Shown here piece after piece: positions 16,465-63,604 of a DNA stretch of 64,000 bases (its first letter is position 1; every line of letters begins with the position of its first letter). The translations under genes were made by a program, and so were the position numbers. The notes below the pieces were generated by a model, which was given only the letters and a program-made list of their open reading frames with translations, searched no databases and had not been told where the DNA came from. The stretch comes from Perna viridis (taxonomy: Eukaryota), in the NCBI GenBank assembly GCA_037379345.1, contig CM074512.1, positions 36,890,001 through 36,954,000 of the forward strand, read 5' to 3'.

Positions 16465-16721
16465 TCATCTTTCCAACAATTCATGTAACAAATCTAGATG
16501 CCGAGGTGTGACATTTGGGTCACCTTGGGCCTTGTCCATTAAAGTAGAACCCATCTCTCCATACAGGGCATGAACTAGCGTGTGTGTGGCAGACCTGATA
16601 CTAGAGCTCCCGCCCTGAACTGCCCCACTACTGTTTGTGGCTCCCAGTAAATGCCACAGAAGCGGCAACACATGTAGCACCACTTGTTTCTGTTTCCGTG
16701 AGTATACAGTTCTCACCAAAT
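16465..16721 (-). CDS. TOGARAM1: TOGARAM1 last coding exon (TOG4 end)
   Basis: tttgcag acceptor, phase 1, DLVRTVYSRKQKQVVLHVLPLLWHLL... to TGA. Confidence 0.92.
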
Positions 16722-22700: not shown

Positions 22701-25700
22701 ACCATAATACATCCTTTTTTATGATGGTTTTGTTTTATTGGTCCTGATTCCCCATATATAGCATAAATGGAAGTGAGTACATGTATAGCAACCTAACTTT
22801 CAATAAAAATATGCATACTCGGTTATGATCTAAATATAAGTGATGGCTTAATATTGTTGGCAAATCATTTAACATAGTGCTGATCATTGTTGAATTGAAT
22901 TACTGTCAATATTTTATTTAGGTTGCATAATCATGTACACACAAACAAGTAGGTGGCAAGCCTCAACTTTGTCACCTCTTTTATAGCTTGATTAATAAAT
23001 CCATACTGTAAGATTGATAAATTCCAATAATAACATAGTTCACCTAGTTAAAGATAATTTACCAATGCTATTTTCTCATTAGGCTGATTGATTGTTAAAA
23101 ACCCTGCCCTATATTTTTTTTCTTATAAGGTTACAGTATGTTACGAATAAGGTCCTACTCCCTTTCTTCCCCGAGTTCTACTTACTGCATCCATCCTTTT
23201 CTGAAGATGCACAAATAAATCACCAATACAGACAATAGCTGATCTGGAAACTTGCGATCTCAAATTCTTCACCTAAAACATCAGAACATTTATTGATTTA
23301 ATAAAATTCTACTTTAACATCAAATGTCAGAACTAGAAAAAACAATGAAAAATTACAGGACACATGAGACAAATAAATGAAATAAAGTACGACCAATTTT
23401 TTATTGTTATGCATTTCCCTTAAAAATTTACAAAAATTACAACAAAAAACATTAAACTTTCTTCATAACATATTCATTTTATCGAAAGAGTTATGTCAAT
23501 TTAAGACAAACTTCTTCATAACATATTCATTTTATCGAAAGAGTTATGTCAATTTAAGACAAACTGGCCAAACTACAATTGTATTCACATAATTACGTAC
23601 CTCTTTTAAGATTGCCAATAATACATTATGTAGCTGATTTGAAAGCGTGTCTGGGTGAAACAAAGCCAGCCGACGAATACTGTTCAGACCATTACACTTG
23701 ACTTCCCTAAAAATTAATAGAAGTCAAATCAAACAAAAAGATAAACACAAAAAAAAAACCAATTAATACAACCTAATCAGTGCAGCTTTTGTTTTTTTCT
23801 ATTACAATGTTTAGTATTTTTTTTCAGTTTTTCGTTTGTCTATAAAGTTATACCAACAGAGACATTGATATTCCTAATTTTTACTTTTCTTCTGATTGAG
23901 TTATTATTAATTTTCCAACACCCAGACTGCACTCTACAACCTCCAATACCAAACTTACCATTCTTCATTTGAAACACAATTCATTGCATCACGGAGAGCG
24001 TGATCTGGGTCCCTGTAAGGCTGCCAGTCATCTGGGTTATCTGATTCTAACACAGATTTTGACGTTTCTGACGTTTGACTAGGACTGCAAAATTTACAAA
24101 CATGACTGATTAGTATCTTCAAAGTTTTCATTTTTATTTATAGAGGAACAGAACTGGCAACAACCTCAGCAACTAAAAACTATACTTTGAACTACTATGG
24201 GATATCCATATCAGTTCAAATACATAAAACATTGCAAAACTTACTAGCACTATGTTCTCGAAATCACAAATATCAATGCCAATTGAACCAGATAAAACCT
24301 GTTTCATTTAAAAGCTATTTTGCCTGTATTTCCTCATTATATATTTCATATCAGTAAAGTACTAACAGGATTACATGTATAAAGTTGAATGAAAACACTA
24401 AAAATTGATAATGTTTAGCAAACTTAAGTTTGTATCTTTTCAGTAATAAATGTGATAAGAATTACAAACTATGAATCACTAATGAATTAAAATATCCAGA
24501 CTTAGAGAAATTTACACAATTAGCCGAAGAATGAAAGCCATTCAACACATCAATATTATTTCATATTGTCACAAATCAATATGAAATATTACAAAAGGAT
24601 TCATTCAATAGTAAAAAAAACACAAAGCACTGAAATACTCACGATGTAACTATCATAGCAACGATGTTGCATAATAATTCATAAAAAATGTCATTGTTTC
24701 AGATGCAAATAATCCACTTACGTTTTCTTCATTGGTTTCCTTGGAGACAACGAAGGTGAGGCTCTGGTTTTCGGTGTACTAGAACCAGATGATGGGTTTG
24801 ATATTGATATTGCTGTAAATACAAAGAATAAACATTAATTTTCTCTCCAGCATAGACACCAAGCACAGATACCTGATCATTATGTATCATTAATGTACAT
24901 GGAAATGCTGCAGCTGCACTAATTTATCTCTTCTATTTCAGAAAAAAAACCCAAGAACTAATGAGTTTGTTTGTTTGTTGGGGTTTAACGCCCGATCAGC
25001 AATATTTCAGCTATATTCAGAACTAACGAGAAAACTCCATATAATTGAATAAGGCCATGGAAAACAGCTACTTTCATTAGATGTTCAAAAATGCAGGTTC
25101 CTGTGGATTGTTTGTAGGATAGAAATACAGATACAGATAAATCTTGCTTAAAATTAAAGAGAAAAAACAAAATTAACATATTTGCAAAAACACACTATAT
25201 CCCTGACCCACTAGGGCTAAAACTTGAAGTAAAGTTAGAAATACAATATGTAGTTCCAAAGAACCAACCAAGCTTTGGAAATACCATGAATTACGAAACT
25301 TCTAATAAAGCAAGAAATGATTTTTTTCTTTCTTTTTAACTTAGCCTATCAATAACTTTTATGTGAGACTTAAAAAGGGATTTCATCAAAAGATGGAATG
25401 TCCCTATGACACAAATGTTTCTACTATGCAACACCTTTTCCTATCTTAATTATAATCACATCATGAAAGTCTAAAAGAAATTGACATTTCAGCAGATTGG
25501 TGATGATGAAGGCTGATAATTTGTCAAACTGACAACTATACTACCTAAAAACTACAATATGATAATACGACTTTAATCAATACAACTAATGAACAGCTCA
25601 TATTTGAAAAAAAAACCTATTAAAACATCATTTAGTCAAAGAAGCACAATTACCACAAATACAAGCTGTATCTAATGTTACGTGCGAATCTCAAAATCAT

Positions 25701-28700
25701 ATCAAACTTGCCGTTTAGATTAAATACTCAAAGTTGTGACTCAAGACATTAATTACACTTTAAAAGGAAGTACTTCAAAGAAATTTTTTGATACACTTTA
25801 AGTGTCATGATTTGGAGCAGTCAATTGTATCAAACAACCTTAATGACCTTAAAAGCACGACGAAAAATGTAAAAAGCAAATGACCATTAAAATATTCTGT
25901 ACTCAGCCAAAACAAGAATCACCAAATATCCTTAAAACAATTTATTCTCTCCAATGAATCACAGGATCCCAATCCACAATAATCTTATGCAATCATATTA
26001 CATCCTAACACTGGAGAAAATGTCTATCAATCAGCATATAGAGAAACAAGCTATGTCTGCCTTGTAATACAGATTAATTAGTTCATTCACTTTCCATATG
26101 TCTAATTAATGACTCTAGACATCCAATCATTCTTGTGGAAGCCTGATAAATCCACTGACTGAAACGTCCACTAATTTACTTAGCTTTTTCAGTTGCTTTA
26201 ATTTAATTAGTATGGAAAGGAATCTAATCGTGGAAGACTGCTATTGCCACTGACTAATAATTCACACAGAAAACGAAATTATCCTGATAATAAATCCTGA
26301 TGGAAATCATAGCATCATGCATAACGGATGAAGATTGAGATGCTCTATTAAGAACTGTGCAGGACCATGACATCAAGTAACCTCCAGCACAGACTGGAGT
26401 CATAAAAATCTGTTGTCAAGCTGGATGACAAAACATGAAGCAAACTAGGTTATCCTGATACAAGTACATAGATGTCAATAACAGCATAAAGAACCAACTC
26501 CATATTAAGTCTAGAACCCACTCTCTTGTTGTAATTTCATTAGTTAATCTTACAATTGGGGGTTATTCACTTCATGACACTTTCAGCATACAGCCAAACC
26601 TATCATAGTGACCATCTGTACTCAGCAATATCCTGTCTTAACGGACTATGATTATAATATCCCTATGTAGTACATTCTATGTAAAATTTGCCTGTTTATA
26701 AAGATCACCTGTCTAATGTAATTATGATTTTAGTCTCCTTTGGAATGTAACTTAGTTTTCCTTCATCTCTTTAATTTCACTTTTGGAAATCATTTGCTCA
26801 ATGAAGCACTTAGCATTTTTTTTATTCACCATCTATCATTTAATTTTACTTTTTAGGAGTCAATCACTTATTGGCACTTTCAGCATACTTTTCTTCAATA
26901 ACTAAGAAATAGACTACCCTACATCAGTCTGAAATAGAAGTCTCCTGGAGACCCTTCACATAAATGAACAAAATATTAACTGAGAAAACAGTAAAACAAG
27001 CCTTACAAAGCAAATAGAAATCTACATCCAACCAAATGAATTTGTTAGTTGGCAGCATAAATGCCAACATAAAGTGCATATAGAGAGTTGCATGAAATCC
27101 ATACCACAGAAATTAGAAAACTTTAATATACATGTTCCTTACCCAATATTAAAGACATAGCCAGGGTCTCATAAATTATATAAATAATAAAATTTCAGCT
27201 TTGATAGTAAATGTGACAAATTGAAACAAAGGTAAGAAAATATCTCTGACAATATAGAGTAATCTAAAGCATGTTTTATGAGATCCAGGCCTGAAGTCGT
27301 AGTTAATGACAGTAAAGAGTGTAAGGCCATTTAAATATTTCGGTTCTCAAGCCATTTTTCATAAAAATCAACCAGAGCAGAAGACATTTCTTAACCATAA
27401 AGTAGTAAAGACATTGCTTTTACATTATTCACAGCAAAAAACAAAAAAAATGATGAAGGTCATTTTCTTTTTTCATTGATATAATGATAAAAAATTGGTA
27501 AGGAGACAATGGGGCCTGAGAACCAAAAAAATTGCTTATAGGTGGCCTACGGTAAAATTTAAACATTGCAGTGCAGTAAAAACTTACACTCAATACCTAT
27601 GCTTTCATTAGTATTCAGCCGACGTAGCTTCTCTTGTTGACGCTCCCGTTCCTTTCGAAGCTTTTCGTCATGTTCTTGTTTCTTCTTTTCTCTTTCTATT
27701 CTTTGCAACTCAGCTTTTTCTTCCTTCTCCTTTTGTACTCTCTCCAATCTTTCCTTCATGGTTTTGCTCATGGGTTTATTATTCAACTGTAACAGATAGG
27801 TTGATATCATACTCTAACATTAAAATACATGATCTGTAAAAATCAAACACTACAGTACTGGGTTGCAATATTGATTGTAGCAACATAGAATGTGCCATAT
27901 AGTGGCAGATTTTCATTCATTTAACCAACATCAGAAGTGGAAATAATTTCCAGTCAAAACTTCACTATACGGTTGTAGTCATCTAAATACTTTAGAACAG
28001 TAGTCAAATATTTAACTCACACTTTGCCCTATGCATATTAAGTGTGCTTTCCATTTATTCATTCAAGCTGAACCTCAGATTTGTTTTCTACTATTTGCCC
28101 ACATCACACAGAGCTTAGAAAAGTTCTAGGAATAGCTCTCCATAAATCAAAAAGTTGATAGCTACCTCTATACATCAAAAACGTGTTTCAATATAAAGCT
28201 TTCTAAAGCAGACAGCAAAAATTCAGATGTAGCAGGTGGAAATTGCTACCTACAGCTACTTTTAAAAATATTGATCAAAGAGGCTTGTTAAAGATGAGGT
28301 ATCATATGTATAGAAAGTGGAACATGTTTAAATTCAGTTTGTATTTGATATTGGAAAGCAATAAAAGTCCAATGTCATCAATGTCTTATATATATATGCA
28401 TTACAAATACTTTGTAAATTTACCAATCAGACCATGTTTGTTACATCTTAATGAAGAAGACTGTAGTTATATTCTGTACACAACAAACTACAAACCTTAT
28501 CTAACATTCCAGCACATTCTATGTTCATTTTAACACAGTTTATACTTTTTAAATCTTGTTTATCTTGATTAATACCAAAACACAAAACAACATAGCTACT
28601 CATTTTGGTCACATTTATTCATTCCAAAGGCCTCCAAAATGGCAAGCTCTAACACTTATAAAAAACTGAATCAATTTCTTATACTTAATGCATCAGAGTA

Positions 28701-31700
28701 CATTTTGTATTTGTTTTTTCCATATTTTTCAATCACAGAGGTCTTACTTTCACATTCTTGCATTTAGAAACATTTCAAATCAATTGGAATACAATTTATC
28801 TAAGTGCAAAGTAATCCATGATCAAATAACTCTAAACCTCATGATTTTTAGTTGTAATTGATTTTTACAGACAAACAAAATTTGACGACTTATCAAAACC
28901 AAAACAAATTCTTCATAAAACAGTATTTTTTGACATTATGACATTTCTACTAGATTTTAACCACTTTCAATTTCTTAAAGGGCTTTTTGAAGTTGGCTTC
29001 ATTGTCTAGACAAAGAGACTAAACAGATAACTTTTCTTGTTGGGTATACAACCCACATATCACCTGAATTATTTCAATGCATTGATATACATGTACTATT
29101 AACCTCAACATTTTTGCAGGGTGTTATTTAGGCAGTTTGCTGGGTTAAACACTTGACCTGGAAGTAAATTTTGCAGAAAGTTTCTGCAAATATATTCCAA
29201 TGGAGTTTTAGCGTGAGGATTATTTTATGTAAATTTCTCAAACCTGAATTCAACAAAATAATCCACCCATACAAAAATGACCTTATTTACAGAATTTATT
29301 TGTAACATGGAACACAAGAATATATCTGAATGCTTACATCCTCTTCATCAGCATAATCATTATACAATTCATCATTGGTACGATTGTTAACACCTACACC
29401 AACAACACCACTGGAGAAATCTTTACCATCATTTTTCTGAGGTTTGCGATCAGAGTCTTTAGACTGGGAATTTCCAGCAGATGAATGCTCAAACCCATTG
29501 CTGGAATCAAACATTCCTGGGAAAAAAAAAAATCATAAGCATCAATAAAATGAGTCAGTGACCACAAGTCGAGTCTTCAACATTTTTATTGTAAAATACT
29601 GCATAGCAAAATTGGTTAATACACAACAGGAGGGACATTGTACTTTTAGACAATTATTTAACACTTACAAACAAAATCTTATAACATGCAGTCTTGGATC
29701 TATTAAAATCTATATCAGAAACATTACTGTTGAAGTAACTGTATTAAACTTAAATTAAGTAAACAAAAAAACCAGAATAGGTTCAAAAACCTATAATTTC
29801 CATTTATTATGAAAATTATTGTAATCATTTTTTAAGAATCAAAACCCATATTTGGCATTAATTTACATATTTGCCTTCATAAATGTATTACCCCCTCTGC
29901 TTCAGTTAACACAGTTATGCAACCTCTCAAAACAAATTTTTTTTAAAGTTTATATTCGCCATAAAAAGGTCTCTTGACATTAGCCTACTATCAAATTGAA
30001 TAAGATGTTTACCATAATCATTAATAGTAAATTTTTACCCTTTGCAAATGGCTATTTACCTTGTTCACAGTAGATCCACATGACAACTTTTCAATATCAA
30101 ATTATTTCAAGTTTCACACTTGGACTTCTTTAAAGCAAATAATTTCATGCATGTATTAAAATGCACATAACCTTCATATAAAAAATAGTTCAATTATGTC
30201 AAGTAAATTGAATTTAAAGCACCACTTCTTGAAAAGATTAAAAATGTTTGCGACTCATCATATTGTGTATAAACATGATAAATTTCCAATTGACTAGCCC
30301 ATTAATGAATTTTGTTCAGAAAGATGTATTCAGTTTGTCATTGGAGTAGAATCAATCTCCGTTTATTTACCTATCAAATTTGATAAGAGAGCAAAATGCA
30401 TTTTCTTTCATAGACTAACATACATTTGGAAGGCCATTGTATGTTTTATCCCCTGCTTCATTGTAAGTCTTAAAATAGAGGCTATCAAATAACACTAGAA
30501 GGTAGAGCAACTACAATGTCTCCTATAAGGATTTTATCACAGAACTGAAAGCCAGATATTCCCACAACAAATTCTTAAAATAGAGGCAATAAATGGACAT
30601 TGGAATAGCAATTGGCATCTATATCTAAAGAAGAGCAGTTAAAATTTAGCAGGAGGTACATGATGTAGGAGATATTCATTTATAGCTAGTACTATCAGAT
30701 CATGCAATAGTCTACAAAAAAGTTATTAACAAACAGCATGTCAGTTGACAGTTAGTGCAGGTGTTCCTTTGATATGTGATGCAAAATAAAAGCCTTATTG
30801 TGTTTTTGTGGTCGTCATTTCACAATTGATGTAGTTTTGCAATATATTATGAGAAAACAACAAAAGCCTCCATCTGTATCAATTCACCATTAGTGACTTA
30901 ATATTAAATCGCCTCCCTTTTTTTTGCTTCTTAAAATGCCAGACTTCATTGTGCAAATAAAATTTAGATGCAATAATGCCGAGTAATAGTACAAGTATAC
31001 TCCATTAATACAATACATGAACCTTTTGATATTAACACATTATACACAGCCTACTTTAATATTAACTTGAAGAAAATGCAACTAAACTACACTTAATATA
31101 AACTCAGAAATGGTACATTTTTAACTATTTTGTCATATGTCCACATAAAAGTAATTTCTCCAGAAGTTTGAATAATTAATTGACAAAAAAAGATCCCTTC
31201 AGACAGTAACAGCTAAAATTTCCTCAAAAAGAAAACACTATCAGCCATAAGTTTTGGTTGTCATTAAATTGAACCTGACAAGAAAATCTTAATTCAATTG
31301 ATCTTCATTAAAGTATTAAGTGATACATTAAAAACAAAATGTTGTATACTAGATCGAAATAAGAACTAATACCCCCACTCAACCATTTGTCAAACATGAA
31401 AAAGAGAGACACAGTACAAATCAACATGCAAAAGCAATATACCAAATATCTAAGCATTCCCTTAAATAAAGATGAGAAATTTGTTACAGAAAAGTTTAAT
31501 GGACAAAGGTGATTGCAATATAGCACCCACTCAAAATAAACAGCCTAAGCACATGATACACTCTTTCTTTCTTTTATTTTTAAATTATCACATGTGAAGT
31601 CCCATAACTCTAAAACATATAAAAAAAAAGTTTAGTTAATGTACAGCATGCCACCAGACAGACAAGAGTATCTCATACATGTGTATCCATCGAAAAATGG

Positions 31701-34700
31701 GCATATTATAAAAATTAGCTAGCATTAAAATAGAAACTTACAGAGCAGTGTTGAGAAATAGCTCCTTTTGTGTATGTTTTGCAGTCTAATTTATTGCTAG
31801 GGCTCTTGACTATGGGAGATCATTAAAAACAACATTCTTACAAAATCAACACGGATTTGTGAAAAAAGCATGAGTAACTTTGATTATGTAATACCCTATG
31901 AAAGCACTCAAATAACCCTGAAGGAGTTACTTATCAAAATATCAATTCTATACAAGGATAGAAGCATAACACCTTGAAATGCATACATCTTAATTAATAT
32001 AAGGAGATAGGGCGATGAAAGGTCTTACTGGTCTAAGATACAACTGAAAATTAATAATAAAGTGTTGAATGATTTAATCATGAATTTGCAGACTTGAATC
32101 CATCACAAATGAGAAAACATAAAGACTTCTGATAATTCCTGCATTAAAAGAACAGAAAAATTGCTTGAAGTTAACCAATATTCAGATATTCTGTCAAATT
32201 TTGTACTTTTTGGTCACTCTCTGGTCATAGTTTTGGCAAGGAAATAAATTGGTGTCCACATCCAAGAAACAACTTCACAGTTAGTAAATACATTATTTCA
32301 TAGTTTATTATATGTGAAAATATAAAGTTGTTTCTTGGGTTGTGAGCATAGTTTTCTAAGTGTAAATATGTCAGGAAAAAAAAACAAAAAAAAAACAAAA
32401 AAATTTACAATTCGCAGAAGTTTTTGTTTAATGACGAAAAATTGTGGCACCATTATGACATCATAACAATGAATTAATGCCACAAAATATTATTTTTCCT
32501 TAAACTTATATCTTTTACTATGTTATAAACATTTTTATACTATTTCAACAAAGTTGATATTTTTAGGCAATATCCATAGCTTAATGTCCCTACACCTTTG
32601 GTTAAAATCTTTGATTACTTCAGGAAAATATTGTGAATTACATCAATGACAGTATTATACTAAAATTATACCACAGGATGTGTACTATTGTGTAGACCCT
32701 ATTCCAGCCCTGATTTCATGAAATTTTGTTAGTATTTCAGAATGTATACCCAAGTGAAAGCAAAGATCATGAAAAGTGTTTTTTACACCAATACCCAAAA
32801 GAGAAAAATGGTAATGAATAATGTTTAAAGATGTTAATTCTAGTATTTCCTGTCAGTATAGAATACTAGGAAATCAAATTCTGTTGAAATATTGTCATCA
32901 AATTAAGTCTCCCTTTCAAACTTGTCCACTCTGAGAAGTCCAAATAAAGTGGAGTTCAAAGGTCAATATGAATAAATTTCAGGTCCTTTTGAATTTCCTC
33001 TTCAAAATATATACATATGCCCACAATATTCCAGATCACTCTGTTATTGATCAAAGTGGACATTGTTAGTTTATCCAGCAAGAAGATAAGAAAAAGGTAT
33101 GCCACATAGAACATAAATTTTCAAAAAAGATCAACAAAAAAAAATATTGTTCTAAAACTACTAAAAAAAGCAAAAGAAATGAGGACAACAGACAAAACCT
33201 ACCCTTGCCAATTACACCAATCCCATCAGAGGTGGGGATTTTATCATCATCCCAGTCCACTGCACCGTGGCTGTTTACTGAGGCCACACCTAAAGGTGAC
33301 AAAAGGGGGCCTGCAAACACAACAACAAATGGCATGGGTGAGTGCTGATTGGTCAGTGGATTAACCAATCAAAAGGATTTGAAGTGAACAGTAACATGCA
33401 GTGATGTTCAACCATGTTAGAGCAGAAAAAAGGGTTTTGATAAAGGGGAGTGCAGAATAAGCTTCTAATAATTTAGGTCCTATTTTTTGTGATGATATAC
33501 TGGTGCTCTTTATTATTTTGTTCTACCCTAAGAGATAGAAATACTTCTAAGTCTACAGTTTATTTTCCACTCCAAGATAAAAAAAAACAAAAAAAAACAG
33601 AAAAACAGAAAAAAAAAGAAACAATGAAATTTTCTTTTTTCAATTGGGAATTAATAAAATTTTTTAAAAAAAAGTATTAAAATGGGAATTTTCAGATTTT
33701 AGATTTATTTTTGCTGATTCTCTGGATGTTACTATTCACGTCTTTCAACGCCTTTTGAGTTCCCATTATACAGCATTTAGTGAGTAAACATTCTATGCCT
33801 CCATAACTTTCTGTAAAAGGATGACTTCAACATATTAGATATTTCAAAGACCTTTATCATGCAAAGTGAAGAATAATACATTTTACAGAAACTGAAAACA
33901 TTATTTTAAATATATATTCAATATGTATGCATTTTATTTAAGTATTTTCATTTTCGTAGTTTTACTTAATGTTTAAAATATATAGCATATTGCTCTATAC
34001 ATAATCAAATTGATATTCTTTCTACATATAAGAAATTTTTTTGAAAATTTTAAGTTTCAAAACTGAATTCAAGATCTGGTAAAGTAAACAGTGAAAAGCT
34101 TAGTTAGTCAAAAGTGACATAACATATTGCAGCAAATCTAATAAAAAACTTGAAAAAGTGAAGAACACTTCTAGTGCTTCAAACTGTGTTTCATTTTCAA
34201 TACAGAACAATATTTCAATTAATCGTCCTACCAAAATGCCATTTTTAATCAATGCACAAAATTCATTACCTTATCTCAAAATGAAACATTTTGAATATCG
34301 TTTCTTTAACAGGAGCAATATGATAAATGACATTGATCACAGAATAAAATAATTGAAACTGGGCCTAGAAAAATACATTGTCCACAATAAACAGATGTAC
34401 AAAAATATAGTTATTTTAGAATAAAATCTGGTAATTTAGGATTTAAAGCCAGTCCATACAAATCAAAGAAAATATCAGGAAAAATGAAAATCCACAATAA
34501 ATAAAAGAACTCCCAGAAGCTTTATCATCATCCTTTACAAAGAGATATAGAGGCAAATGGATTGATATTATACCACACATCATTAATTAACAAAGTAACA
34601 CTGATAATTGTTCAAGCAGTGACTCTTTTTTTTTACTGCAGTGTCACACATATTTATCAATGGTTATTACAAACTTAGTGAGGTGCTCAAAAGATTTGAA

Positions 34701-49700: not shown

Positions 49701-52700
49701 TCAAGCATGAATTATTACAGTAGAACCAATTAGAAATCAATATCATCCCATATAGAACTCTTTTCTCTAGAGGTAAGGAAAGTCCCTCTTACACTGATCA
49801 CCTTCAATACAAAAAGAACTGTTGATATTGTTAACATTTACTTTTATCTTCGTAAATAACATGTTTAAATCCCAGGATCCACCTGAAAACCGTGATTTAA
49901 ATATACACCTAATCAAACACTACAATGGTCAATTTTTATATTAAGCACAGAAACTACCACAACAGACTGCCATACAAATAGCAGAACTAAGTAAAGCATA
50001 ATTCCTATCTTTTTGGTAACATTACAGGCAGATTCAGTTCCAATCAAATCTTCAACCAGAAAAAAATTCCTATGATTCCTGGAGATCAATTTACCATATT
50101 TGACTTCCACAGAATCTACACAATAGGCTTAGAGACATGAGACAATGAATTTCAATATAATGAAACTTAACAGTGTAACATATGAAGTTATTAAATTTCT
50201 GAAAACAGTGTTAAATGTAACAAAGAAGCATAAAAATATAACACCAGTTCATATTTCCTACTCATTTGAATATACTCTGGAATTTCAGGGGAAGGTCTTA
50301 AGCTGAATTTTATCGTATTTCATATATTAATTCTGTAACCAGAATATTTACCTCACTTTAAAAATTGTAAATAAGGATTAATTCTTTCAATCACAAATTA
50401 AATATCGCCTGAATATAGCTGAAATATTGTTGTTCGGGTGTTAAACCCCAACAATCAATCAATCAATCAATCACAAATTAAATATCGCCTGAATAGAGCT
50501 GAAATATTGCTGCTCGGACATTAAACCCCAACAATCAATCAATCAATCACAAATTAAATCTGACCTTTGCAAAAAAGCTATGGTTTGACTTATTTATTGC
50601 ATTACTTAAAGAAAATGGATCTCATGCTGGAATAGAACCAAGTTAAGGATACAATGACTGAAGAAACTTCATTATGACCAAATACAAAAAAGGGGCACAC
50701 ACGCACACACAAAATAATGTAGGACACAACAAAGTGACAAGCTCCTTCTGATCAAGATTAAAAAAAAATAATATAAAACATCAAAATAAGTAATAATAAC
50801 TTGTTGACTTTGATAGTATAACAGCAGAGATCTTAGTCAGGACTTGAACCCATCACCTTTTGTCATTAACCATATTTAATTCTTAAACCCACATTGAGAA
50901 AATATCAAATTTGTAGTTAATCTGGTATTTGATCCAGTACCAATTATCTCTCTCCTCTGAGATTTCTACACAGCTAGGATACCTCATACAAAAGTTTGAA
51001 ATTTGTCTACAATTTACAACCCAACATTCCAACAGGTAACAAGCTTAACTTTCAAATAACAATACCAAATAGTGAAATATTAAATGTAAAATGTTTCCAT
51101 CACTTGGTTGAAAATGATCCAGATAAAGTAGTGGCAACATAATTGAGTCCTTATTCAAACAGCAAATAACCTCCAGCAATGTGAACCTTACTAGTAATAC
51201 AGCTTTAAAATCTGAGGCATATTCTAGATTATTTTGATTGTTTTTTAACAGTTAAAATTGCATTTAGAGCTTTTAACTCAAACACAGAAATTTACCATTT
51301 CTTGTCACAATATCACTTCATTCTGTAACACAAGGCTAAAGTTAAAAATAAAATATATGCCAGTATATGAATACTAATACTGACCAATCTGATACATGTA
51401 GCTGAAAGTAATAAAGGACAAATGCTTTATAAGGCTACTCTATGCAAAATTTATATAAATAACACACTCTTTAGATTTTGAGGAAAATATATAGTGTTTA
51501 TACACTATCCCTTTATCATTAGGGAAATGAAATATGCCAAGCCGAGGAAAGCCAATGGCTTGTTAGGTCAGAAGTTAGTGACCAACATAAATTTGACCAT
51601 CTTCAAATAAAAGCTGTCTGGAGGTACTTCCTGGTTGTAATAATGAGATATCATCTTGGCAACCTTTTATCTAGTTGTAACCTATGTTTGAAATCCTACC
51701 AATATTCACCACAATGATGAAAAGAGACAACACAAATGGAGGGATTGGTAACCTATTAAAACACAGTAACCCTAGTTATAAGTGGACAGCTGAAATGAGA
51801 AATAAGATCTACTCATACCTATAAGAGCAATTTTAATAAGTTAAACAGTGCCAAATAAACAATATGTCAAGATTGAATAGCATTTTTTCAATGTCCAAAA
51901 CAGACCCCCTTCCACCATAATGGTCTCTGATAATGATTTAATAAACAGTTCATTACATGTTATTAGCAAGCTAAATAAACTCTAAGGTGGTACAAATGAA
52001 ACCCTTCATTGATCAAATTTCTTTTCACATGACATTAATGAAATTTCTCAGTCCATTTATCAATCTGAAGACCTAACACCCGAAAAAGAAGCATTCATTA
52101 AAGATGTCATTACTGGCATTCAAATATCAATAAAAAAAATCCTTACTAAATTAACAATATTGCGGGGTTCACAGTGAACACACCTAATATTGTGTCAACA
52201 TCACAGCTGTTGTGATAAATATAGATACAAAAGATGAAGAATGATGTAAGAGTACTCTATATATCTCTAATTTAATTGTCTTAAAGCCAGAATTCTGATT
52301 AAATATTCAATGACTATTACAGTACTGAATAGCCATACAAATAGGAAAAAATCAAAGGCAGATAACTCCTTAAAATTTGAAAATTATCAAGAATAAAAAA
52401 AATGCAATCATTCAATAATTAAAGTAATAATTGTTTTTTATGTAGATTTTAGTTCTGACTTTTCTTTTCATCATATACATGTACTATAATATTGAGTCAC
52501 TTGTATCTAAGTAATTGCACCATTTGAAATATCATGTAACTACATGTATGTAATCACATGCTTTTAAAATTTATTACTTTTTTTTAAAGTTTTTTGCTGC
52601 CATAATCTTGTATTATACTACATAACTGATGAACTGACAAGTTTGATGTCAATTAATCCATAAAATGAGAAAAAAATAACATAAGAAAAGATATAGTAAC

Positions 52701-55700
52701 ATAATGACATTGTGATTTTACATGATTCTGGTTTAAATAACTATTAAAAATTGAGAATTATCTAATTAATGTCAAAAATGAATAGCTATCATTTGTTGTA
52801 CTGTAACTGACACAAATATGACACAACTTGCATATGATCAAACTTTCCTATTTACAGTGAAAATTACATAGTAATACTTTTTAATGCTTTGTCCTCAAAA
52901 TTTAAATGACGATCTATTGTCAAAGCACAGAAAAGATTATAGGGTGTTGCTTAAGACTCACTTTGTTACACCTAAATGTTTCTTGTATCTAATGTCTCAA
53001 GTAATATTTCTTTCAGACATAATTTTATTGAACGAATTGTGATTGAATTTACTTCAAGGTTATTTTCTCCCACGTCAATCTATGCTGCTATGTGCATGTG
53101 AGCCCAAGTTTGACTTCCCAATAGAAAATTCTCAAAATAAAGTTTCAATGCTGTCTTTAAAAGAATATAAGGAAAATGAATATGGTGAACATGTCAAAGA
53201 GACAATAACACCATCAGGAAGAAAATGTCAGTTCAAGGCCACAATATTAGGTGACCATGAGGCAGCATTGTTTGTTGCTTCAATACAACAGCAAACTCAA
53301 ACCTTGGCTTTGATTACTTTGTTGAAGAATACATGTCTAGGCTTAAAAACACCAGAGGTTTTTCATAATTCTGCCTAAAGTGAAAATTGTCTTTCAGTTT
53401 AAGGGTTCTTTTATCATTACTTTTTGAAAGACTGACTTTTTACTGGAATTCTATACATGAAGTATGATAATAGTTCAGCCCAATCTGATAAAGTCAAAAA
53501 AATGTTGCAATTGAATGATGGAATGAATGCTCATATAAAATCTGTATGGGAGGAGTATACAAATAAGTTCCAGCCAGCCTATGTGCACTTACATGGCTAA
53601 ATTTACCATATAACAGGACATACATGTATTGGCTGATGATCAATTCGATAGCCGGTAAATAAGATGCTAGATACTTCAGAATAATTAACAAGGAATTATC
53701 ACTGACAAAAACAGTAGACAACAGAAGTGACACAATCTGATGGATTCCTATATACATGTTACTAACACAAACTCCCAATACACCAATTCAAAATGCCTAA
53801 ATCTGTCAGTTCAAAGACTTGTATACTTCATGGTTGATCAGCGTTTTACTTCATTCAATCTACTGATAAAACTAACACAGAACCTATCAAATATTTATAA
53901 TGGCTGGTCAATTAACGTAATTGCAGTGCTAGAATTTTAATGGCCGACTCAATTCCCCCTTGCGAATAGTGCTTGCCTGCAACAAACTCATAAATAGTGT
54001 TGTTTTCAAGCCAAGTTCTTAATCAATCCAATAACATGAAAAATTGAGTAAGGTAAATTATTTATTCTAGTCCCTAAGCAGTGTGACATTAAATGATTCT
54101 ACTTCAACCCAGGACAATCTGAGACAATGCCTTCCTGTTCTAAGCTTAATATAGATAAAGACAATAAGACTACAGAACACAAAGTGACATTAACCTCCAA
54201 TCACTGCCTCATAAATATTTTCATTAATATCAACACACATCAATATCGTCAAAAGAGATGTCAACTATCATAATACTACAATATCACAATCCTGGCAGAA
54301 TGCTTAACCAATTAACATCCGCTCCCAGCACCCTATAGAAACCCATATCTGAAATCAATCACTAATTGAGCAAGACTCTGCAAAAATGAATGAAATTTAC
54401 CAACAAAAATCGAACATTCACTGGAGCAAGGAGAAGAATTCATCTATGAATTGAATTTAGAGCATTTAAACAAATTGAAGGTTACAGCAGTCACGTCACC
54501 GTCATACCTTGTTTTCTGATGATCTGTCGATGGTAAGGTAAACTGTGTTGGAAGTAAACAGTACAGAATGTCTTAGAGCAATATTTGTCATCAAATTTAA
54601 AATCTAATCAATTTTCAAGTGCTACTTGTTCAATCAATTTAGTCACATGCTTTCAAAATCTCAGCTGGAAATGTCCAAAAGTGGAAAATAAATTGGCTCA
54701 CTGCATTATGATTTTCTTCCTCACCCCATGTTCATATCATTTTTTTTGTTAACTGACTCTCCACAATGTTTACTATATTTATGGCTTACAAACAAATTAT
54801 TATGTGAAAGCTGCAAGGTCATCTGTTTGCAAATACATTTGAATTAATTAAAAGCAATGTAAGTAAATATTTAGTTTATAAAGAAATGTTTAGTAACAAT
54901 GTGTGAATTACAACTGTAAAAAGCAGTTAGTGCTTAATGAATCAACATATGAGCAACTGGTACAAACATACATGTATAAATTGGGAGTTATATAAGTAAG
55001 AAAATTAAAGGGATAGTTTTAATGGATTAAAAAATTATTAAAAAATATGAAACATAGCAAAAGGAGGTCAAAAGGACAATTCAGAGAACTGAAGGGTACA
55101 AAACATAACAGCTACAAGGAAATCTAAATAACTGTAGAAAACAAGAAAAATGAAAGCTGTATTAGGATGTCTACAGGTGAACAAAGGTATGGGCCACCAC
55201 CTCTAACATCAAAGCAGCCTGCATTACCTCTTTCTGTTTCTGCTAAATCTAAACTTCCCAGTACACTGGAGCTAATTTTCGTACTTTGAATCTTCTTTCT
55301 ATTAAGGTAGTTCTGTGTGTATGAGCCTATGAGACAATAGCAAAGCATTGTGAATTAGTTAAGTGCAAAAGTGTTCAAAGCATTCATTAACATGTGAAAA
55401 CAATAGAAAATCAGCAAGAAAGTGCCTGCTTATGGTAATTTCCAGCAGAGTTAACTATTAAGTAAGTTAAGCAAGATTAATTTCACAGAAAATAATATTT
55501 GAACTCATGAAAGCAGATCAGTCTTTTAACTTGCAACTAGCTTTTATATTCAACTGGAAATGTGCAAAATAATCTGTTTTTATTATATTTTTATCTTAAT
55601 AAGCTTTTGCTAAAAGCAGACAAAACAGAAATCCAGCCGTAACTTTTCACAGGGGTATGACAATGGAAGGTTTCTAGTCATATAAGAACCATAAGAATGT

Positions 55701-58700: not shown

Positions 58701-59256
58701 GTAGTTGAGAGTTTGGGTTTAGGTTTATCAAGCATTACATAATTCTATCATCTGGACTGAATTCAATTTTAGTTTACTTTGAGAGTAATTATAAAAATGT
58801 GTAAAACTGGCATCTTTGATATCAACCCATGATACTAAGCACAGGTCTGACAGGCAAGTGGAGGAAAAAATTAAGAAAAATGCTGACTTCTTTTATTTAG
58901 ATCTTTCCTAAACAGAAGATAATTAAATATTTTTTTCTAATTCAACAGTTAATCCTAATCATCCTACATCTACACAGAATGATAGATTCCCAGCTTCATT
59001 TTTATATCTCCTATGTACATGTAAGTGAAAAATTATTGTAATCAAAATTCACTGAATGCAGTATTTATGGAAACACAGGTGCAAGAGGTTTTGAGTTTGA
59101 ACACTTTGTACCTGGTTCTTGCTGGGACTCCTCAACAGCATTTATCCCAACTACAGTAATTCTACGTTTAGGAACTCGTTTACCATTGTTTATACTGTCT
59201 TGGCCACCGTCTTCACCCCAAGTGTTTCTTGCCTTTGGGGGACCTTCATTAAAAGA
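16465..59256 (-). CDS. TOGARAM1: TOG array regulator of axonemal microtubules 1 (crescerin-1/FAM179B), 3' part: linker + TOG3 + TOG4; 5' end beyond the window
   Basis: In-phase GT-AG chain: 59256-59112, 55326-55228, 46409-46335, 42336-42292, 41059-40860, 36889-36690, 35479-35202, 33310-33203, 29516-29338, 27786-27588, 24812-24722, 24084-23959, 23706-23601, 23272-23186, 22681-22533, 21743-21585, 20639-20513, 20078-19978, 19722-19542, 18789-18573, 17060-16974, 16721-16465. TOG signatures: W-E-x-K..GL..IRRLA.FH, EVKNLRSQVSRSA, GESNGFIREDVDK, LDSSPETRY.GRK, DW.DR..GI, IFDKFLPRLQDPNSKVNLYALQ. Confidence 0.92.
16974..17060 (-). CDS. TOGARAM1: TOGARAM1 exon (TOG4)
   Basis: 87 nt phase 1/1, DGGLLLQPLANQAQ. 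Confidence 0.9.
17649..18518. mobile_element. Degraded pogo/Tc2-like non-autonomous DNA transposon
   Basis: Left end accatatatacttaagtataag...tataagtc; right end tataagtcga...gcgaatatacacgata; resembles the TACCGTATATACTCGAGTATAAG TIR class. Confidence 0.5.
18573..18789 (-). CDS. TOGARAM1: TOGARAM1 exon (TOG4)
   Basis: 217 nt phase 0/1, IFDKFLPRLQDPNSKVN. Confidence 0.93.
19040..19311. mobile_element. AGGC...GCCT-ended MITE (Kolobok-like by termini)
   Basis: ta|aggct... and ...tttggcct|aa ends; similar ends at 17468-17555, 27324-27548, 62118-62366. Confidence 0.45.
19542..19722 (-). CDS. TOGARAM1: TOGARAM1 exon (TOG4 start)
   Basis: 181 nt phase 2/0, SNDWKDRHKGITQLL. Confidence 0.92.
19978..20078 (-). 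CDS. TOGARAM1: TOGARAM1 exon (TOG3-4 linker)
   Basis: 101 nt phase 0/2, GLGEMPSESSSARG. Confidence 0.9.
20513..20639 (-). CDS. TOGARAM1: TOGARAM1 exon (TOG3 end)
   Basis: 127 nt phase 2/0, YNGRKILNLLMGHPDFNKMLEKHLP. Confidence 0.92.
21585..21743 (-). CDS. TOGARAM1: TOGARAM1 exon (TOG3)
   Basis: 159 nt phase 2/2, HKNVNVRRTTS...DRILP...DSSPETR. Confidence 0.93.
22533..22681 (-). CDS. TOGARAM1: TOGARAM1 exon (TOG3)
   Basis: 149 nt phase 0/2, GESNGFIREDVDKVL. Confidence 0.93.
23186..23272 (-). CDS. TOGARAM1: TOGARAM1 exon (TOG3)
   Basis: 87 nt phase 0/0, VKNLRSQVSRSAIVCIGDLF. Confidence 0.93.
23459..23565. repeat. Perfect 53-bp tandem duplication
   Basis: cttcataacatattcattttatcgaaagagttatgtcaatttaagacaaact starts at 23461 and again at 23514. 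Confidence 0.92.
23601..23706 (-). CDS. TOGARAM1: TOGARAM1 exon (TOG3)
   Basis: 106 nt phase 2/0, (W)EVKCNGLNSIRRLALFH. Confidence 0.93.
23959..24084 (-). CDS. TOGARAM1: TOGARAM1 exon (TOG3 start)
   Basis: 126 nt phase 2/2, DWQPYRDPDHALRDAM. Confidence 0.9.
24722..24812 (-). CDS. TOGARAM1: TOGARAM1 linker exon
   Basis: 91 nt phase 1/2, S/P/K-rich, gtaagt donor. Confidence 0.85.
24966..25020 (-). mobile_element. 5'-truncated SINE/LINE 3' tail insertion
   Basis: CTGAATATAGCTGAAATATTGCTGATCGGGCGTTAAACCCC(AAAC)n; TSD agaactaatgag (24954-24965) / agaactaacgag (25019-25030). Confidence 0.8.
27324..27548. mobile_element. AGGC...GCCT-ended MITE
   Basis: aggccattta...ggttctca at left, tgagaacc...ggtggcct at right (inverted). 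Confidence 0.55.
27588..27786 (-). CDS. TOGARAM1: TOGARAM1 linker exon (E/K/R-rich coiled coil)
   Basis: Phase 0/1; alternative in-frame donor ending at 27597. Confidence 0.88.
29338..29516 (-). CDS. TOGARAM1: TOGARAM1 linker exon
   Basis: 179 nt phase 1/0, poly-T acceptor, gtaagc donor. Confidence 0.85.
33203..33310 (-). CDS. TOGARAM1: TOGARAM1 linker exon (symmetric, probable cassette)
   Basis: 108 nt phase 1/1, ends GIGVIGK(G), gtaggt donor. Confidence 0.78.
35202..35479 (-). CDS. TOGARAM1: TOGARAM1 linker exon
   Basis: Phase 2/1, SPFESKPKLAR...DVQVVGKGY; alternative in-frame donor ending at 35190. Confidence 0.85.
36690..36889 (-). CDS. TOGARAM1: TOGARAM1 linker exon
   Basis: 200 nt phase 0/2, MMHSLKSIRSSASKKK, Ser-rich. 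Confidence 0.87.
38073..38111 (-). CDS. TOGARAM1: Candidate 39-nt TOGARAM1 exon (MMKYLKSIHGGPK), duplicate of the start of the next exon
   Basis: ttttaacag acceptor, AAG|gtttgt donor, phase 0/0, 19/24 nt identical to the first 24 nt of exon 36889. Confidence 0.55.
38754..38922. mobile_element. Short Tc1/mariner(pogo)-type MITE
   Basis: TIRs ctgtgaaacctgtct / agacaggtttcactg followed by TA; sibling at 39407-39581. Confidence 0.7.
39407..39581. mobile_element. Short Tc1/mariner(pogo)-type MITE, sibling copy
   Basis: ta|cagtgaaaacctatct ... gggttcagtttatacaggtagccctg|ta. Confidence 0.62.
40860..41059 (-). CDS. TOGARAM1: TOGARAM1 linker exon
   Basis: 200 nt phase 1/0, ESPIPTKAALARSA. Confidence 0.87.
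42292..42336 (-). CDS. TOGARAM1: TOGARAM1 45-nt symmetric exon (DVTPPNTYNEDYWR)
   Basis: tttgttgtag acceptor, GAG|gtaagg donor, phase 1/1. Confidence 0.72.
46335..46409 (-). CDS. TOGARAM1: TOGARAM1 75-nt symmetric exon (SKVKSNHSSHFKPHVRPFLEVSGN)
   Basis: Strong pyrimidine tract ttttctcttatcag, gtaagt donor, phase 1/1, open. Confidence 0.7.
49345..49411 (-). CDS. TOGARAM1: Candidate TOGARAM1 alternative exon or internal start exon (..MTFGYGMGLVCSVSK)
   Basis: Donor AAG|gtaatt in phase 1 with downstream exons; in-frame ATGs at 49390 and 49372; acceptor ttttgtag at 49413-49412. Confidence 0.5.
49690..49735. promoter_or_regulatory. Paired CCAAT boxes upstream of the candidate internal start exon
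   Basis: gaaCCAATca (49697) and gaaCCAATta (49726), 29 bp apart, about 300 bp upstream (minus orientation) of exon 49411-49345. Confidence 0.35.
50388..50559 (+). mobile_element. Head-to-tail dimer of a truncated retroposon tail with triplicated target site
   Basis: Two copies of atcgcctgaat..agctgaaatattg...ttaaaccccaa(caat)n; caatcacaaattaaat occurs at 50388, 50468, 50544. Confidence 0.82.
54508..54542 (-). CDS. TOGARAM1: Candidate 35-nt TOGARAM1 exon (asymmetric)
   Basis: tttacttccaacacag acceptor, AAG|gtatga donor, open in all three frames. Confidence 0.45.
55228..55326 (-). CDS. TOGARAM1: TOGARAM1 99-nt symmetric exon
   Basis: tgctttgctattgtctcatag acceptor, GAG|gtaatg donor, phase 1/1, SYTQNYLNRKKIQS...AETER. 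Confidence 0.72.
57079..57142. repeat. Short imperfect tandem duplication
   Basis: atgattct.aca.atgaccacagtaatct present twice. Confidence 0.75.
59112..59256 (-). CDS. TOGARAM1: TOGARAM1 linker exon
   Basis: cttttctttttcag acceptor, CAG|gtacaa donor, phase 0/1, SFNEGPPKARNTWGEDG...RRITVVGI. Confidence 0.82.
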
Positions 59257-60932: not shown

Positions 60933-61007
60933 CTCAAACAAGTCCTCTGCATAAGGGTGTACTCTTCCAACTTTACAAAGGGCAGGAATACAAGCCCACA
61001 CACACAT
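60933..61007 (-). CDS. TOGARAM1: Candidate alternative first coding exon of TOGARAM1 (MCVWACIPALCKVGRVHPYAEDLFE)
   Basis: ATG at 61007 with A at -3 and an in-frame TAA 6 codons upstream; exactly 25 codons to donor GAG|gtaata; phase 0 matches exon 59256; more GC-rich than flanks. Confidence 0.62.
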
Positions 61008-62366: not shown

Positions 62367-62611
62367 TCATGATTTCACAAAAAGCAGAAGCCGCTTATTA
62401 CAAGTATAGAAGAAACAGTGATAAATCATAAATTGTCTGTGTATATCATACACATGTATCTGTACATTTTTGTATACATTTACCAATAGGTGTGTTTGCA
62501 CTTATTGAAGATCTTTAGGTAATCACTATTTTTATAAAGGTTATACAATGGTGCATTAGTTGTGTTTCACCATATCTGTTCCTTTTTCTATATTGAAATA
62601 CATGTATTATG

Positions 62612-63185: not shown

Positions 63186-63604
63186 GTATTATGTACATGC
63201 AGTATGTAATGGAATTCCAAACACAGCTTGAATCTGGAGAATGTTACAATATTTAATATGTGCTACATGCAATAGTGAATACAAAATTTATTTTACACAT
63301 AAATCCAGACAGTTACCATTTACATGTACTTTTTTATCCCTAAAATGTCTATATCATTTTCTTCCTCTTGTCATCACAACAAAATTCTTTAACTGCTAGC
63401 CATTAGCAAAAAGTGACAATACATAACTTTCAGGCTTCTGAACCACATTTGATGTGTCAACCAAGAATTTAAAAAAAAGTACTTGTCTCTAAAAGAACTA
63501 GTCATTTTATTGACATACAAAATGTACAATGTACCAATGTATTGACAATGATGGAATTTTGCAGGTCTCTGTCTACAATCTAGTGGCCAGTTAATTCCTT
63601 CTAC

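What the first reader, a model, noticed from the sequence alone, without database searches (positions are those of the whole stretch)
24643..61007. Possible nested-promoter system producing a graded series of N-truncated, differently anchored TOG3-4 isoforms
Seen: at least three phase-correct ATG-to-donor segments (61007, 49372, 24656) lie along about 36 kb of linker introns, which are much longer than the compact TOG3-4 introns. Two encode acylation-like leaders and one overlaps an X-box-like motif. Established: vertebrates have a shorter paralogue, TOGARAM2/FAM179A, with fewer TOG domains. Inference: this single locus may use internal promoters to make full-length, membrane-anchored and minimal TOG3-4 proteins for different cilium types.
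Basis: inference. Interest (0 to 1): 0.75.

Follow-up and report, generated by a model that had tools for sequence, protein, structure and literature searches.

The report
Conserved alternative start exons in mussel TOGARAM1

Summary
The window holds most of a minus-strand TOGARAM1/crescerin gene of a mytilid mussel. Its start codon and TOG1-2 lie in one 1.9-kb exon just beyond the window end.

All three ATG-to-donor segments exist and are in phase. Their number means nothing: 115 such segments in sense introns, 105 in antisense, 106±13 in shuffles.

Homology rescues two.
- The 61007 leader matches the N-terminus of Mytilus californianus RefSeq isoforms X16/X17 (19 of 24 residues), and more distantly an oyster leader.
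- The 49372 leader, extended to an in-frame ATG at 49390, matches M. californianus X18 and Crassostrea angulata X6.
- All these models lack TOG1-2.
- The 24656 segment has no support, and its X-box fails the consensus.

RNA contigs from four runs showed no coverage of the 49.3-kb leader. They did reveal cassette exons at 55.3, 46.4 and 42.3 kb, and a transcribed block just upstream of that leader.

Internal promoters, lipid anchoring and cilium-type roles remain inference. The scan had noted both leaders on this same window (s1-770087, s1-770110), not on other DNA.

The parts
60933..61007 (-). L1: alternative first coding exon (25 codons), phase-0 donor GAG|GTAATA. It joins the exon at 59256.
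   Evidence: Sequence. An in-frame TAA lies 18 nt upstream, read. tblastn of the first 30 aa of M. californianus isoform X17 gives 19 of 24 identical, E 1.2e-16. Against the Saccostrea X6 leader, 9 of 25 are identical ungapped, reached by 9 of 100000 shuffles.
49345..49390 (-). L2: alternative first coding exon (15 codons plus 1 base), phase-1 donor AAG|GTAATT.
   Evidence: An in-frame TAG lies 24 nt upstream. 11 of 12 identical to M. californianus X18 (E 4e-7) and 10 of 14 to C. angulata X6 (E 8e-5). No RNA contig covers it in 4 of 4 runs.
24643..24656 (-). Candidate 3 (MIVT plus 2 bases): a phase-correct ATG-to-donor segment, best read as chance.
   Evidence: No relative's model starts there. 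No X-box. Not tested with RNA.
59112..59256 (-). Linker exon E59 (phase 0 in, 1 out), with an internal alternative donor after 59184.
   Evidence: The loose end at 55328 in 4 of 4 runs is the reverse complement of its 3' end (read). Homology.
55228..55326 (-).
   Evidence: tblastn. RNA contigs in X1, X2, X3 and X8. Splice sites.
49445..49836 (.). Transcribed, single-copy, non-coding block 55 nt upstream of L2's first ATG. Strand and role unknown.
   Evidence: Colinear contigs: X3, 392 nt at depth 6.2, and X2, 249 nt (49551-49799) at depth 3.6. The only match in the 723-Mb genome is itself. Stops in all six frames.
46335..46409 (-). Cassette exon E46 (75 nt, phase 1/1).
   Evidence: The X8 contig joins E55 directly to it. 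Splice sites. Matches M. californianus X18 residues 16-42.
42292..42336 (-). Cassette exon E42 (45 nt, phase 1/1).
   Evidence: The X2 contig joins E55 directly to it. Splice sites. Homology.
40860..41059 (-). Linker exon E41 (phase 1 in, 0 out).
   Evidence: The X1 contig joins E55 to it (read). Relatives' genomic ORF fragments keep the exon but not its intron flanks.
38073..38111 (-). Micro-exon E38 (39 nt, MMKYLKSIHGGPK).
36690..36889 (-). Linker exon E36, which begins with ATG ATG.
35202..35479 (-). Linker exon E35.
33203..33310 (-). Cassette exon E33 (108 nt, phase 1/1). Present in some relatives' models and absent in others.
   Evidence: I read the end coordinate.
29338..29516 (-). Linker exon E29.
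27588..27786 (-). Linker exon E27 (coiled, Glu/Lys-rich). There are two possible phase-1 donors, after 27597 or after 27588.
24722..24812 (-). Ser/Pro-rich linker exon E24.8 (phase 1 in, 2 out).
16468..24084 (-). TOG3-TOG4 block: 11 small exons ending at the stop codon, with introns of about 0.24-1.5 kb.
   Evidence: tblastn of relatives. First-exon acceptor. A search with one TOG4 exon finds TOGARAM1 proteins.

Best explanation
The finding lies in the disordered-linker part of a single-copy TOGARAM1/crescerin gene of a mytilid mussel, on the minus strand.

FULL-LENGTH FORM. The four-TOG protein starts in a 1.9-kb first exon. That exon lies 3.5-5.4 kb beyond the window end, next to the only CpG-island-like stretch of the locus.

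TWO ALTERNATIVE FIRST CODING EXONS. Two short exons inside the long linker introns are genuine and conserved.
- L1 (61007-60933) joins the exon at 59256.
- L2 (49390-49345) joins the cassette exons at 46409 and 42336 or the exon at 41059.
- Transcripts that begin with either encode proteins without TOG1-2, the half that binds ARMC9 in human TOGARAM1. They keep most of the linker and TOG3-4.
- The mussel therefore makes a TOGARAM2-like architecture from the TOGARAM1 locus.

OTHER CONTENT OF THE LONG INTRONS. They also hold alternatively spliced cassette exons: E46, E42, E38 and E33.

SHOWN. The exons, their phases, their conservation as N-termini of relatives' models, and the cassette splicing in RNA.

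INFERRED. That L1 and L2 are used in this species, that each has its own transcription start, and what the leaders do. The third segment (24656) is a chance ATG-to-donor match.
For: GENE AND ORIENTATION. One TOG4 exon retrieves TOGARAM1 proteins (names). M. californianus isoform X5 (1708 aa) maps colinearly exon by exon onto L001 plus the window, leaving only 2 residues uncovered. Mytilus proteins are about 85% identical.

EXON 1. It lies outside the window.

L1.
- 19 of 24 residues identical to the N-terminus of M. californianus X16/X17, E 1.2e-16, the only strong hit in 74 kb.
- 9 of 25 identical ungapped to the oyster leader, which also joins the E59 equivalent; 9 of 100000 shuffles reach this.
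- An in-frame stop lies 18 nt upstream.

L2.
- MTFG[YD][GV]MG[LI][VL]CS is shared with M. californianus X18 and C. angulata X6.
- An in-frame stop lies 24 nt upstream.

NEUTRAL CONTROL. Relatives' genomic ORF fragments around exon E41 are 81-98% identical inside the exon and unalike in the intron-derived flanks.

BREADTH. N-truncated models with an alternative first exon joined to the E59 equivalent also exist in Saccostrea, Ostrea, Mercenaria, Ruditapes and Mya.

RNA.
- E59 to E55 is joined in 4 of 4 runs.
- E55 is joined to E41 (X1), to E42 (X2) and to E46 (X8).
- A single-copy transcribed block lies at 49445-49836, directly upstream of L2, in 2 of 4 runs.

SINGLE LOCUS. One TOG4-exon match in the genome.

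LITERATURE. TOG2 binds ARMC9, and TOGARAM2 has only TOG3/4-like domains (passages of PMC11541697, and PMC4642858).
Against: - No RNA of this species was seen on L2's coding part: depth 0 at 49335-49444 in 4 of 4 runs.
- L1 and candidate 3 were not tested with RNA at all. There was one read-laying run, on 5,996 bases, using 4 of the 24 runs listed.
- The runs are Logan contigs labelled 'RNA?' by guess. They cannot show starts or strand.
- The relatives' isoforms are automated RefSeq models.
- CpG observed/expected around L1 (0.13-0.63) and L2 (0.24-0.45) shows no island like the one at 69.2-74 kb (0.8-1.16).
- By count alone the segments are at chance level.
Confidence: 0.7

Rival explanations
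1. All three segments are chance ATG-to-donor matches in AT-rich introns, and no N-truncated isoform exists.
For: 115 sense against 105 antisense against 106±12.7 shuffled phase-matched segments. No RNA contig on L2 in 4 of 4 runs. No CpG-island signature at either leader.
Against: L1 and L2 match the N-termini of relatives' annotated isoforms at 79-92% identity, with E 1e-16 and 4e-7. L2 is kept between mussels and oysters. Intron flanks of E41 are not conserved at the same divergence. This rival still holds for candidate 3.
Confidence: 0.05
2. L1 and L2 are real alternative first CODING exons, but they have no promoters of their own. Transcripts start at the one CpG-rich promoter upstream of exon 1, with a short non-coding exon that skips exon 1 and splices to L1 or L2.
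For: The only island-like CpG region is at 69.2-74 kb. A CAG|GTAAAT donor-like site and a pyrimidine-rich acceptor-like site lie between the promoter-like region and the exon-1 ATG (read). Several AG dinucleotides lie within 80 nt upstream of L2.
Against: The 60 nt upstream of L1 has one AG without a pyrimidine tract. A colinear, unspliced, single-copy RNA block of at least 392 nt lies directly upstream of L2. That fits a local start or divergent promoter transcription better than an internal exon. Tissue-specific promoters are often CpG-poor (general knowledge).
Confidence: 0.2
3. The leaders are conserved for a non-coding reason, such as a regulatory element or a small upstream ORF, and gene-prediction pipelines have merely turned them into protein starts in several species.
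For: All supporting proteins are automated models. L2 is only 15 codons and sits among small upstream ORFs (ATG at 49410 and 49377).
Against: Both keep an open frame, a start codon, a donor in the right phase, and amino-acid-level similarity across species. L1's homologue in oysters has diverged at 16 of 25 residues yet keeps its length and the junction to the same exon.
Confidence: 0.05

Closest known systems
Vertebrate TOGARAM2 (FAM179A, Crescerin2)
   Same: The protein has only the TOG3/TOG4-like pair and no TOG1-2 (passages of PMC4642858, and PMC11541697). The L1 and L2 isoforms would have the same domain content.
   Different: TOGARAM2 is a separate gene. Here the architecture would come from alternative first exons of the single TOGARAM1 locus. 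The N-terminal ~490 residues of four ~1000-aa vertebrate relatives that match only TOG3-4 (I take them for TOGARAM2, but did not look up their names) do not align with the mussel linker or leaders.
RefSeq predicted isoforms of bivalve TOGARAM1-like genes: M. californianus X16-X18 (XP_052097641-3), C. angulata X6 (XP_052701993), Saccostrea X6, Mercenaria X7, Ruditapes X8, Mya X8
   Same: The same exon order, and the same leaders (L1 in X16/X17, L2 in X18 and C. angulata X6) joined to the same downstream exons.
   Different: They are automated models in other species. Nothing is annotated for this genome in the collections searched (best identity about 86%). M. californianus L1 is five residues longer at its 3' end.
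Alternative-promoter genes that give N-truncated isoforms with their own short leaders (a general class; the ADGRB1 intron-17 promoter paper PMC11711277 was seen only as title and abstract in the listing)
   Same: Short ATG-bearing first exons inside long introns replace the N-terminal domains.
   Different: Promoter activity is not shown here.
Dual-acylated SH4-type N-termini and the N-myristoylation consensus (recalled, not tested)
   Same: L2 contains MG[LI][VL]CS. This fits the recalled pattern of Gly, small or uncharged residues, then Ser at the fifth place after Gly, with a neighbouring Cys. The pattern is kept in three species.
   Different: The motif is preceded by six conserved in-frame codons starting with ATG. 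The annotated protein therefore has Thr, not Gly, at position 2.

Membership tests
TOGARAM1 / Crescerin1 | C-terminal TOG3-TOG4 pair homologous to named TOGARAM1 proteins | tested here: met
   One TOG4 exon gives 231 hits at E<=0.001. Hits are named TOGARAM1-like. 11 exons are colinear with M. californianus X5. Pfam on single exon ORFs gave nothing above cut-off, as expected for pieces of 59-100 aa.
TOGARAM1 / Crescerin1 | N-terminal TOG1-TOG2 pair in the same gene | tested here: met
   A 692-codon ORF in L001 is 92.8% identical to residues 1-636 of M. californianus X5 and 63.5% identical to residues 1-658 of Sinanodonta P0002. It lies on the same strand, 3.5 kb beyond the window end, with a phase-0 donor matching E59. 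The exon 1 to E59 junction was not seen in RNA.
Alternative first exon / internal promoter isoform system | ATG exon with an in-frame stop upstream and a donor in phase with the next exon | tested here: met
   L1. L2. Also met by candidate 3, and by about 100 chance segments, so it does not discriminate.
Alternative first exon / internal promoter isoform system | The leader is conserved as the N-terminus of transcripts or models in relatives | tested here: met
   L1 and L2 yes. Candidate 3 no.
Alternative first exon / internal promoter isoform system | Transcripts of this species that begin at the leader and splice to the next exon | tested here: inconclusive
   L2: depth 0 on the exon in 4 of 4 contig sets, but a transcribed block 55 nt upstream in 2 of 4. 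Contigs cannot show starts.
Alternative first exon / internal promoter isoform system | Promoter signature at the leader | tested here: not met
   CpG observed/expected is 0.13-0.63 at L1 and 0.24-0.45 at L2, against 0.8-1.16 upstream of exon 1. This is a weak test, because CpG-poor promoters exist.
N-myristoylated proteins | Gly at position 2 of the translated protein, small residue at position 6 (recalled rule) | tested here: inconclusive
   Met only if the second ATG (49372) starts translation. The first in-frame ATG (49390) and its six codons are conserved in three species.
S-palmitoylated N-termini | Conserved N-terminal cysteines (there is no strict consensus) | tested here: inconclusive
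   L1's Cys2, Cys6 and Cys11 are kept in M. californianus but replaced by Gly, Tyr and Thr in oysters. L2's Cys is kept in all three species. Modification itself is not testable with these tools.
RFX X-box promoter element | Two half-sites GTNRCC and RGYAAC with a 0-3 nt spacer (recalled consensus) | tested here: not met
   13 matches at <=1 mismatch in 84 kb. None lies at 24656 or within 1 kb of L1 or L2. At 24656 the two half-site-like hexamers are 5 nt apart (read).

The most novel reading that the evidence does not exclude
Bivalves, which have one TOGARAM locus, make their 'TOGARAM2' by alternative first exons. One of those exons (L2, MTFG..MG[LI][VL]CS, kept from mussels to oysters) would be translated at least partly from its second AUG. 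That would give a myristoylated and palmitoylated TOG3-4 array tethered to the ciliary or plasma membrane. A membrane-anchored tubulin-binding TOG array has not been described in the searches made here. The split into full-length and TOG3-4-only products would then predate the vertebrate gene duplication.
Probability: 0.12. Interest if true: 0.75.

Novelty: new member of a known kind. Interest (0 to 1): 0.45.

Why it matters
TOGARAM1 is a Joubert-syndrome gene. Its TOG2 domain binds ARMC9, and its paralogue TOGARAM2 carries only the TOG3-4 pair (passages).

If one invertebrate locus makes both architectures through conserved alternative first exons, three things follow.
- It offers a natural system for separating the roles of the two TOG pairs.
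- It suggests that the isoform split may be older than the vertebrate duplication.
- It gives two short, conserved leader peptides whose function (targeting, lipidation, turnover) can be tested directly.

There is also a methodological lesson. A chance-rate test alone would have dismissed two real exons.

Tried and rejected
TRIED, WITH LITTLE OR NO YIELD.
- Pfam on 10 single-exon ORFs: nothing above cut-off.
- Rfam on the whole window at gathering thresholds: 0 matches.
- The search for homologous proteins with the E41 ORF, hoping for transcript-derived fragments that show what precedes E41: 6 hits, all genomic ORF fragments. They served only as a neutral control.
- The search for homologous proteins with a 544-aa C. 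gigas TOG3-4 model (P0208), looking for 'minimal' isoforms: 28 hits, none from a bivalve starting just before TOG3. P0208 itself looks like a frame-shifted model, as I read it.
- Four ~1000-aa vertebrate relatives that match only TOG3-4 (taken for TOGARAM2; names not looked up) against the mussel protein: only TOG3-4 aligns, and the N-terminal motifs are unlike L1 and L2.
- X-box scans and the CpG profile gave no support for internal promoters.
- Three loose-end consensus strings (at 52085, 50770 and 50589) are not in the window. I take them for repeats or other loci.

READINGS REJECTED.
- O. edulis models that start MGHLDQAGRF as evidence for an internal start. They begin inside the exon-1 equivalent, and all 15 isoforms of that gene model lack TOG1-2, so the model is probably truncated.
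- My own first reading, given: '80% chance'. I rejected it.

LITERATURE. Searches, and passages of PMC4642858, PMC11541697, 10.1101/817213 and PMC13104979, showed no description of N-truncated or acylated TOGARAM1 isoforms. No supplement was opened. Supplemental Table S1 of PMC4642858, which lists the Crescerin homologues, could bear on which taxa have a separate Crescerin2 gene.

Full report
WHAT THE WINDOW HOLDS

The window is AT-rich (about 31% G+C). It is G000:C2:36890001-36954000 of a 723-Mb assembly.

Stop-to-stop ORFs on the minus strand show a run of coding pieces from 16.4 to 59.3 kb. One of them, a TOG4 exon at 18568-18828, retrieves 231 proteins at E<=0.001. [quoted passage not shown]

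Mytilus proteins are the closest, at about 85% identity over about 1,650 aligned residues. The organism is therefore a mytilid mussel that is not in the protein collections. Only one place in the genome matches the TOG4 exon.

GENE MODEL

I searched exon by exon.

- M. californianus isoform X5 (1708 aa) maps colinearly.
- Residues 1-636 fall in one exon of L001. This is a 692-codon ORF with its ATG at L001:5442 and its donor CAG|GTGAGT after L001:3538, which correspond to window-equivalent 69,442 and 67,538.
- Then come these exons:
  - E59 (59256-59112, with an internal donor after 59184)
  - E55 (55326-55228)
  - E46 (46409-46335)
  - E42 (42336-42292)
  - E41 (41059-40860)
  - E38 (38111-38073)
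  - E36, E35, E33 (33310-33203), E29, E27 and E24.8
  - 11 TOG3-4 exons down to the stop at about 16468
  These rest.
- The start codon and TOG1-2 are therefore outside the window.

THE OBSERVATION

The three segments are there and their phases fit.

As a count they mean nothing. Segments that run from an ATG through an open frame to a donor at least as good as the weakest of the three, in the phase the next exon needs, number:
- 115 in the sense introns
- 105 in their reverse complements
- 106±12.7 in 100 dinucleotide shuffles

At stricter donor thresholds the figures are 30/26/24 and 3/7/2.6 (an earlier version with a cruder model is).

At I put 80% on chance.

WHAT CHANGED THAT

A search with the 1044-aa Ostrea isoform returned 44 relatives among 8000 scored candidates. 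Their N-termini include the following.

- M. californianus X16/X17 begin MCVWACLPKLCKIGRVEPYAEDVF and continue into the E59 equivalent.
- M. californianus X18 begins MTFGDGMGLVCSSSN and continues into the E46, E42 and E41 equivalents.
- C. angulata X6 begins MTFGDVMGILCSVSA and continues into the E42 and E41 equivalents.

- 61007-60936: 19 of 24 identical, E 1.2e-16.
- 49390-49355: 11 of 12 identical, E 4e-7.
- 49390-49349, for the oyster: 10 of 14 identical, E 8e-5.

For comparison, genomic ORF fragments of relatives around E41 are 81-98% identical within the exon and unrelated in the intron-derived flanks. Intron sequence is thus not conserved at these distances.

Both leaders have an in-frame stop just upstream: 18 nt for L1 and 24 nt for L2.

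HOW WIDESPREAD IT IS

The last cluster look-up showed N-truncated RefSeq models with an alternative first exon joined to the E59 equivalent in more bivalves:
- Saccostrea X6
- O. edulis: five models, for example X5
- Mercenaria X7
- Ruditapes X8
- Mya X8

The oyster leader (MGVIDYVPVLTKFVNLGPPVGHLFEG) shares 9 of 25 ungapped positions with L1. Only 9 of 100000 shuffles reach this. It joins the same exon at the same point, so L1 is at least as old as the mussel-oyster split. The venerid and Mya leaders align only loosely, at 2 of 20 ungapped.

RNA OF THIS SPECIES

The look-up of sequencing runs listed 24 runs. Of these, 17 are guessed to be RNA and hold 15-46% of the words of the TOG3-4 stretch.

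The one read-laying run covered 49335-55330, which holds L2 with E55 as a positive control. It used X1, X2, X3 and X8, from four studies, all as Logan contigs.

- E55 is covered in 4 of 4 runs.
- Its upstream loose end is the reverse complement of the end of E59 in 4 of 4 runs.
- Its downstream loose end is:
  - the start of E41 in X1 (both this and the E59 end were read)
  - a sequence at 42336-42307 in X2
  - a sequence at 46409-46380 in X8
- The linker therefore undergoes cassette splicing.
- L2's coding part (49335-49444) has depth 0 in 4 of 4 runs.
- Directly upstream there is a colinear contig at 49445-49836 in X3 (392 nt, depth 6.2, against 30 for E55) and at 49551-49799 in X2 (depth 3.6, against 9). 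The rest of the 8.8-kb intron is silent apart from a repeat at 50335-50734 and short pieces.
- That block is single-copy in the genome and closed in all six frames.
- It could be a long 5' leader of L2 transcripts broken by low coverage, divergent promoter RNA, or an unrelated intronic RNA. I cannot tell which.

PROMOTERS

CpG observed/expected has a median of 0.24 over 84 kb and rises to 0.8-1.16 only at 69.2-74 kb, upstream of exon 1. It is 0.13-0.63 around L1 and 0.24-0.45 around L2. One isolated window at 62601-63200 reaches 0.96.

This fits a main promoter outside the window. It neither shows nor excludes CpG-poor internal promoters.

No X-box by two recalled consensus forms lies at 24656 or near L1 or L2.

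THE ANCHORS

L1:
- Cys2, Cys6 and Cys11, and the R-V-x-P that the scan's note s1-770087 pointed out, are kept in M. californianus.
- In oysters they are replaced by Gly, Tyr, Thr and N-L-G-P.
- If they matter, they are a mytilid feature.
- At least 2 Cys in the first 12 residues occurs in 3 of 115 sense and 5 of 105 antisense chance segments.

L2:
- The MG[LI][VL]CS motif fits the recalled myristoylation rule and is kept in three species.
- It is rare by chance: 1 of 115 in sense, 0 of 105 in antisense.
- Six conserved codons beginning with ATG, with an A at -3, precede it. The models, and the scanning rule, put Thr at position 2.
- Lipidation of either leader is therefore an open hypothesis, not a finding.

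CANDIDATE 3

None of the 28 hits of 294-952 aa starts just upstream of TOG3 with a similar leader. It is the single such segment in its 637-nt intron, against one in the antisense. I read it as chance. It was not tested with RNA.

COMPARISON WITH WHAT IS KNOWN

Vertebrate TOGARAM2 has only the TOG3/4-like pair, and human TOGARAM1 binds ARMC9 through TOG2 (passages). The L1 and L2 products would be TOGARAM2-like in domain content, but they come from the TOGARAM1 locus.

The isoforms already stand in RefSeq for relatives as automated predictions. Four literature searches and passages of four papers showed no description of them.

I class this as a new member of a known kind: alternative first exons that give N-truncated isoforms.

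LIMITS

- Only one 6-kb stretch could be laid.
- The runs are contigs of guessed kind.
- No supplements were opened.

Noticed in passing
L001:3538-5442 (window-equivalent 67,538-69,442), minus strand: The whole TOG1-TOG2 half (about 635 codons) is one intron-less exon, while TOG3-4 is split into 11 small exons. The donor is CAG|GTGAGT, phase 0.
   Followed up: partly
window 36889 (E36 start): E36 begins with ATG ATG right after its acceptor. Protein models or contig ORFs in C. gigas (P0213, 881 aa, 14 Logan contigs), Mya (P0325, 895 aa) and Lymnaea (P0236, 942 aa) start at the equivalent Met. This may be a further, shorter tier, or they may simply be truncated models.
   Followed up: no
window 50335-50734: Short pieces of very many RNA contigs (summed word depth 8,000-25,000) match here at 95-99% identity. 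This is a repeat shared with highly expressed sequence elsewhere.
   Followed up: no
window 52085-52134: In 4 of 4 runs a contig piece ends at 52085 and continues into the same 30 letters, which are not in the window. It is a repeat, or an exon of something else.
   Followed up: partly
window-equivalent 69,200-74,000 (L001) and window 62601-63200: A CpG observed/expected island (0.8-1.16) lies upstream of exon 1. It holds two GCCATCTTG motifs and a CACGTG within 250 nt of the ATG; their meaning as factor sites is recalled, not tested. One isolated window 1.6-2.2 kb upstream of L1 reaches 0.96.
   Followed up: partly
window 55262: All four RNA contig sets read G where the assembly has T inside E55. 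X1 also reads G>A at 55281. These are probably polymorphisms.
   Followed up: no
window 5376-7963, plus strand; 1090-1425, minus strand: Other genes flank the TOGARAM1 3' end. On the plus strand a 114-aa and a 385-aa ORF lie together, the latter rich in leucine-rich-repeat-like sequence. On the minus strand there is a further coding-looking ORF. Neither was examined.
   Followed up: no
window 49700-49725, minus strand: Two ATTGG (inverted CCAAT) motifs 20 nt apart lie inside the transcribed block upstream of L2. I read them by eye and made no chance estimate.
   Followed up: no
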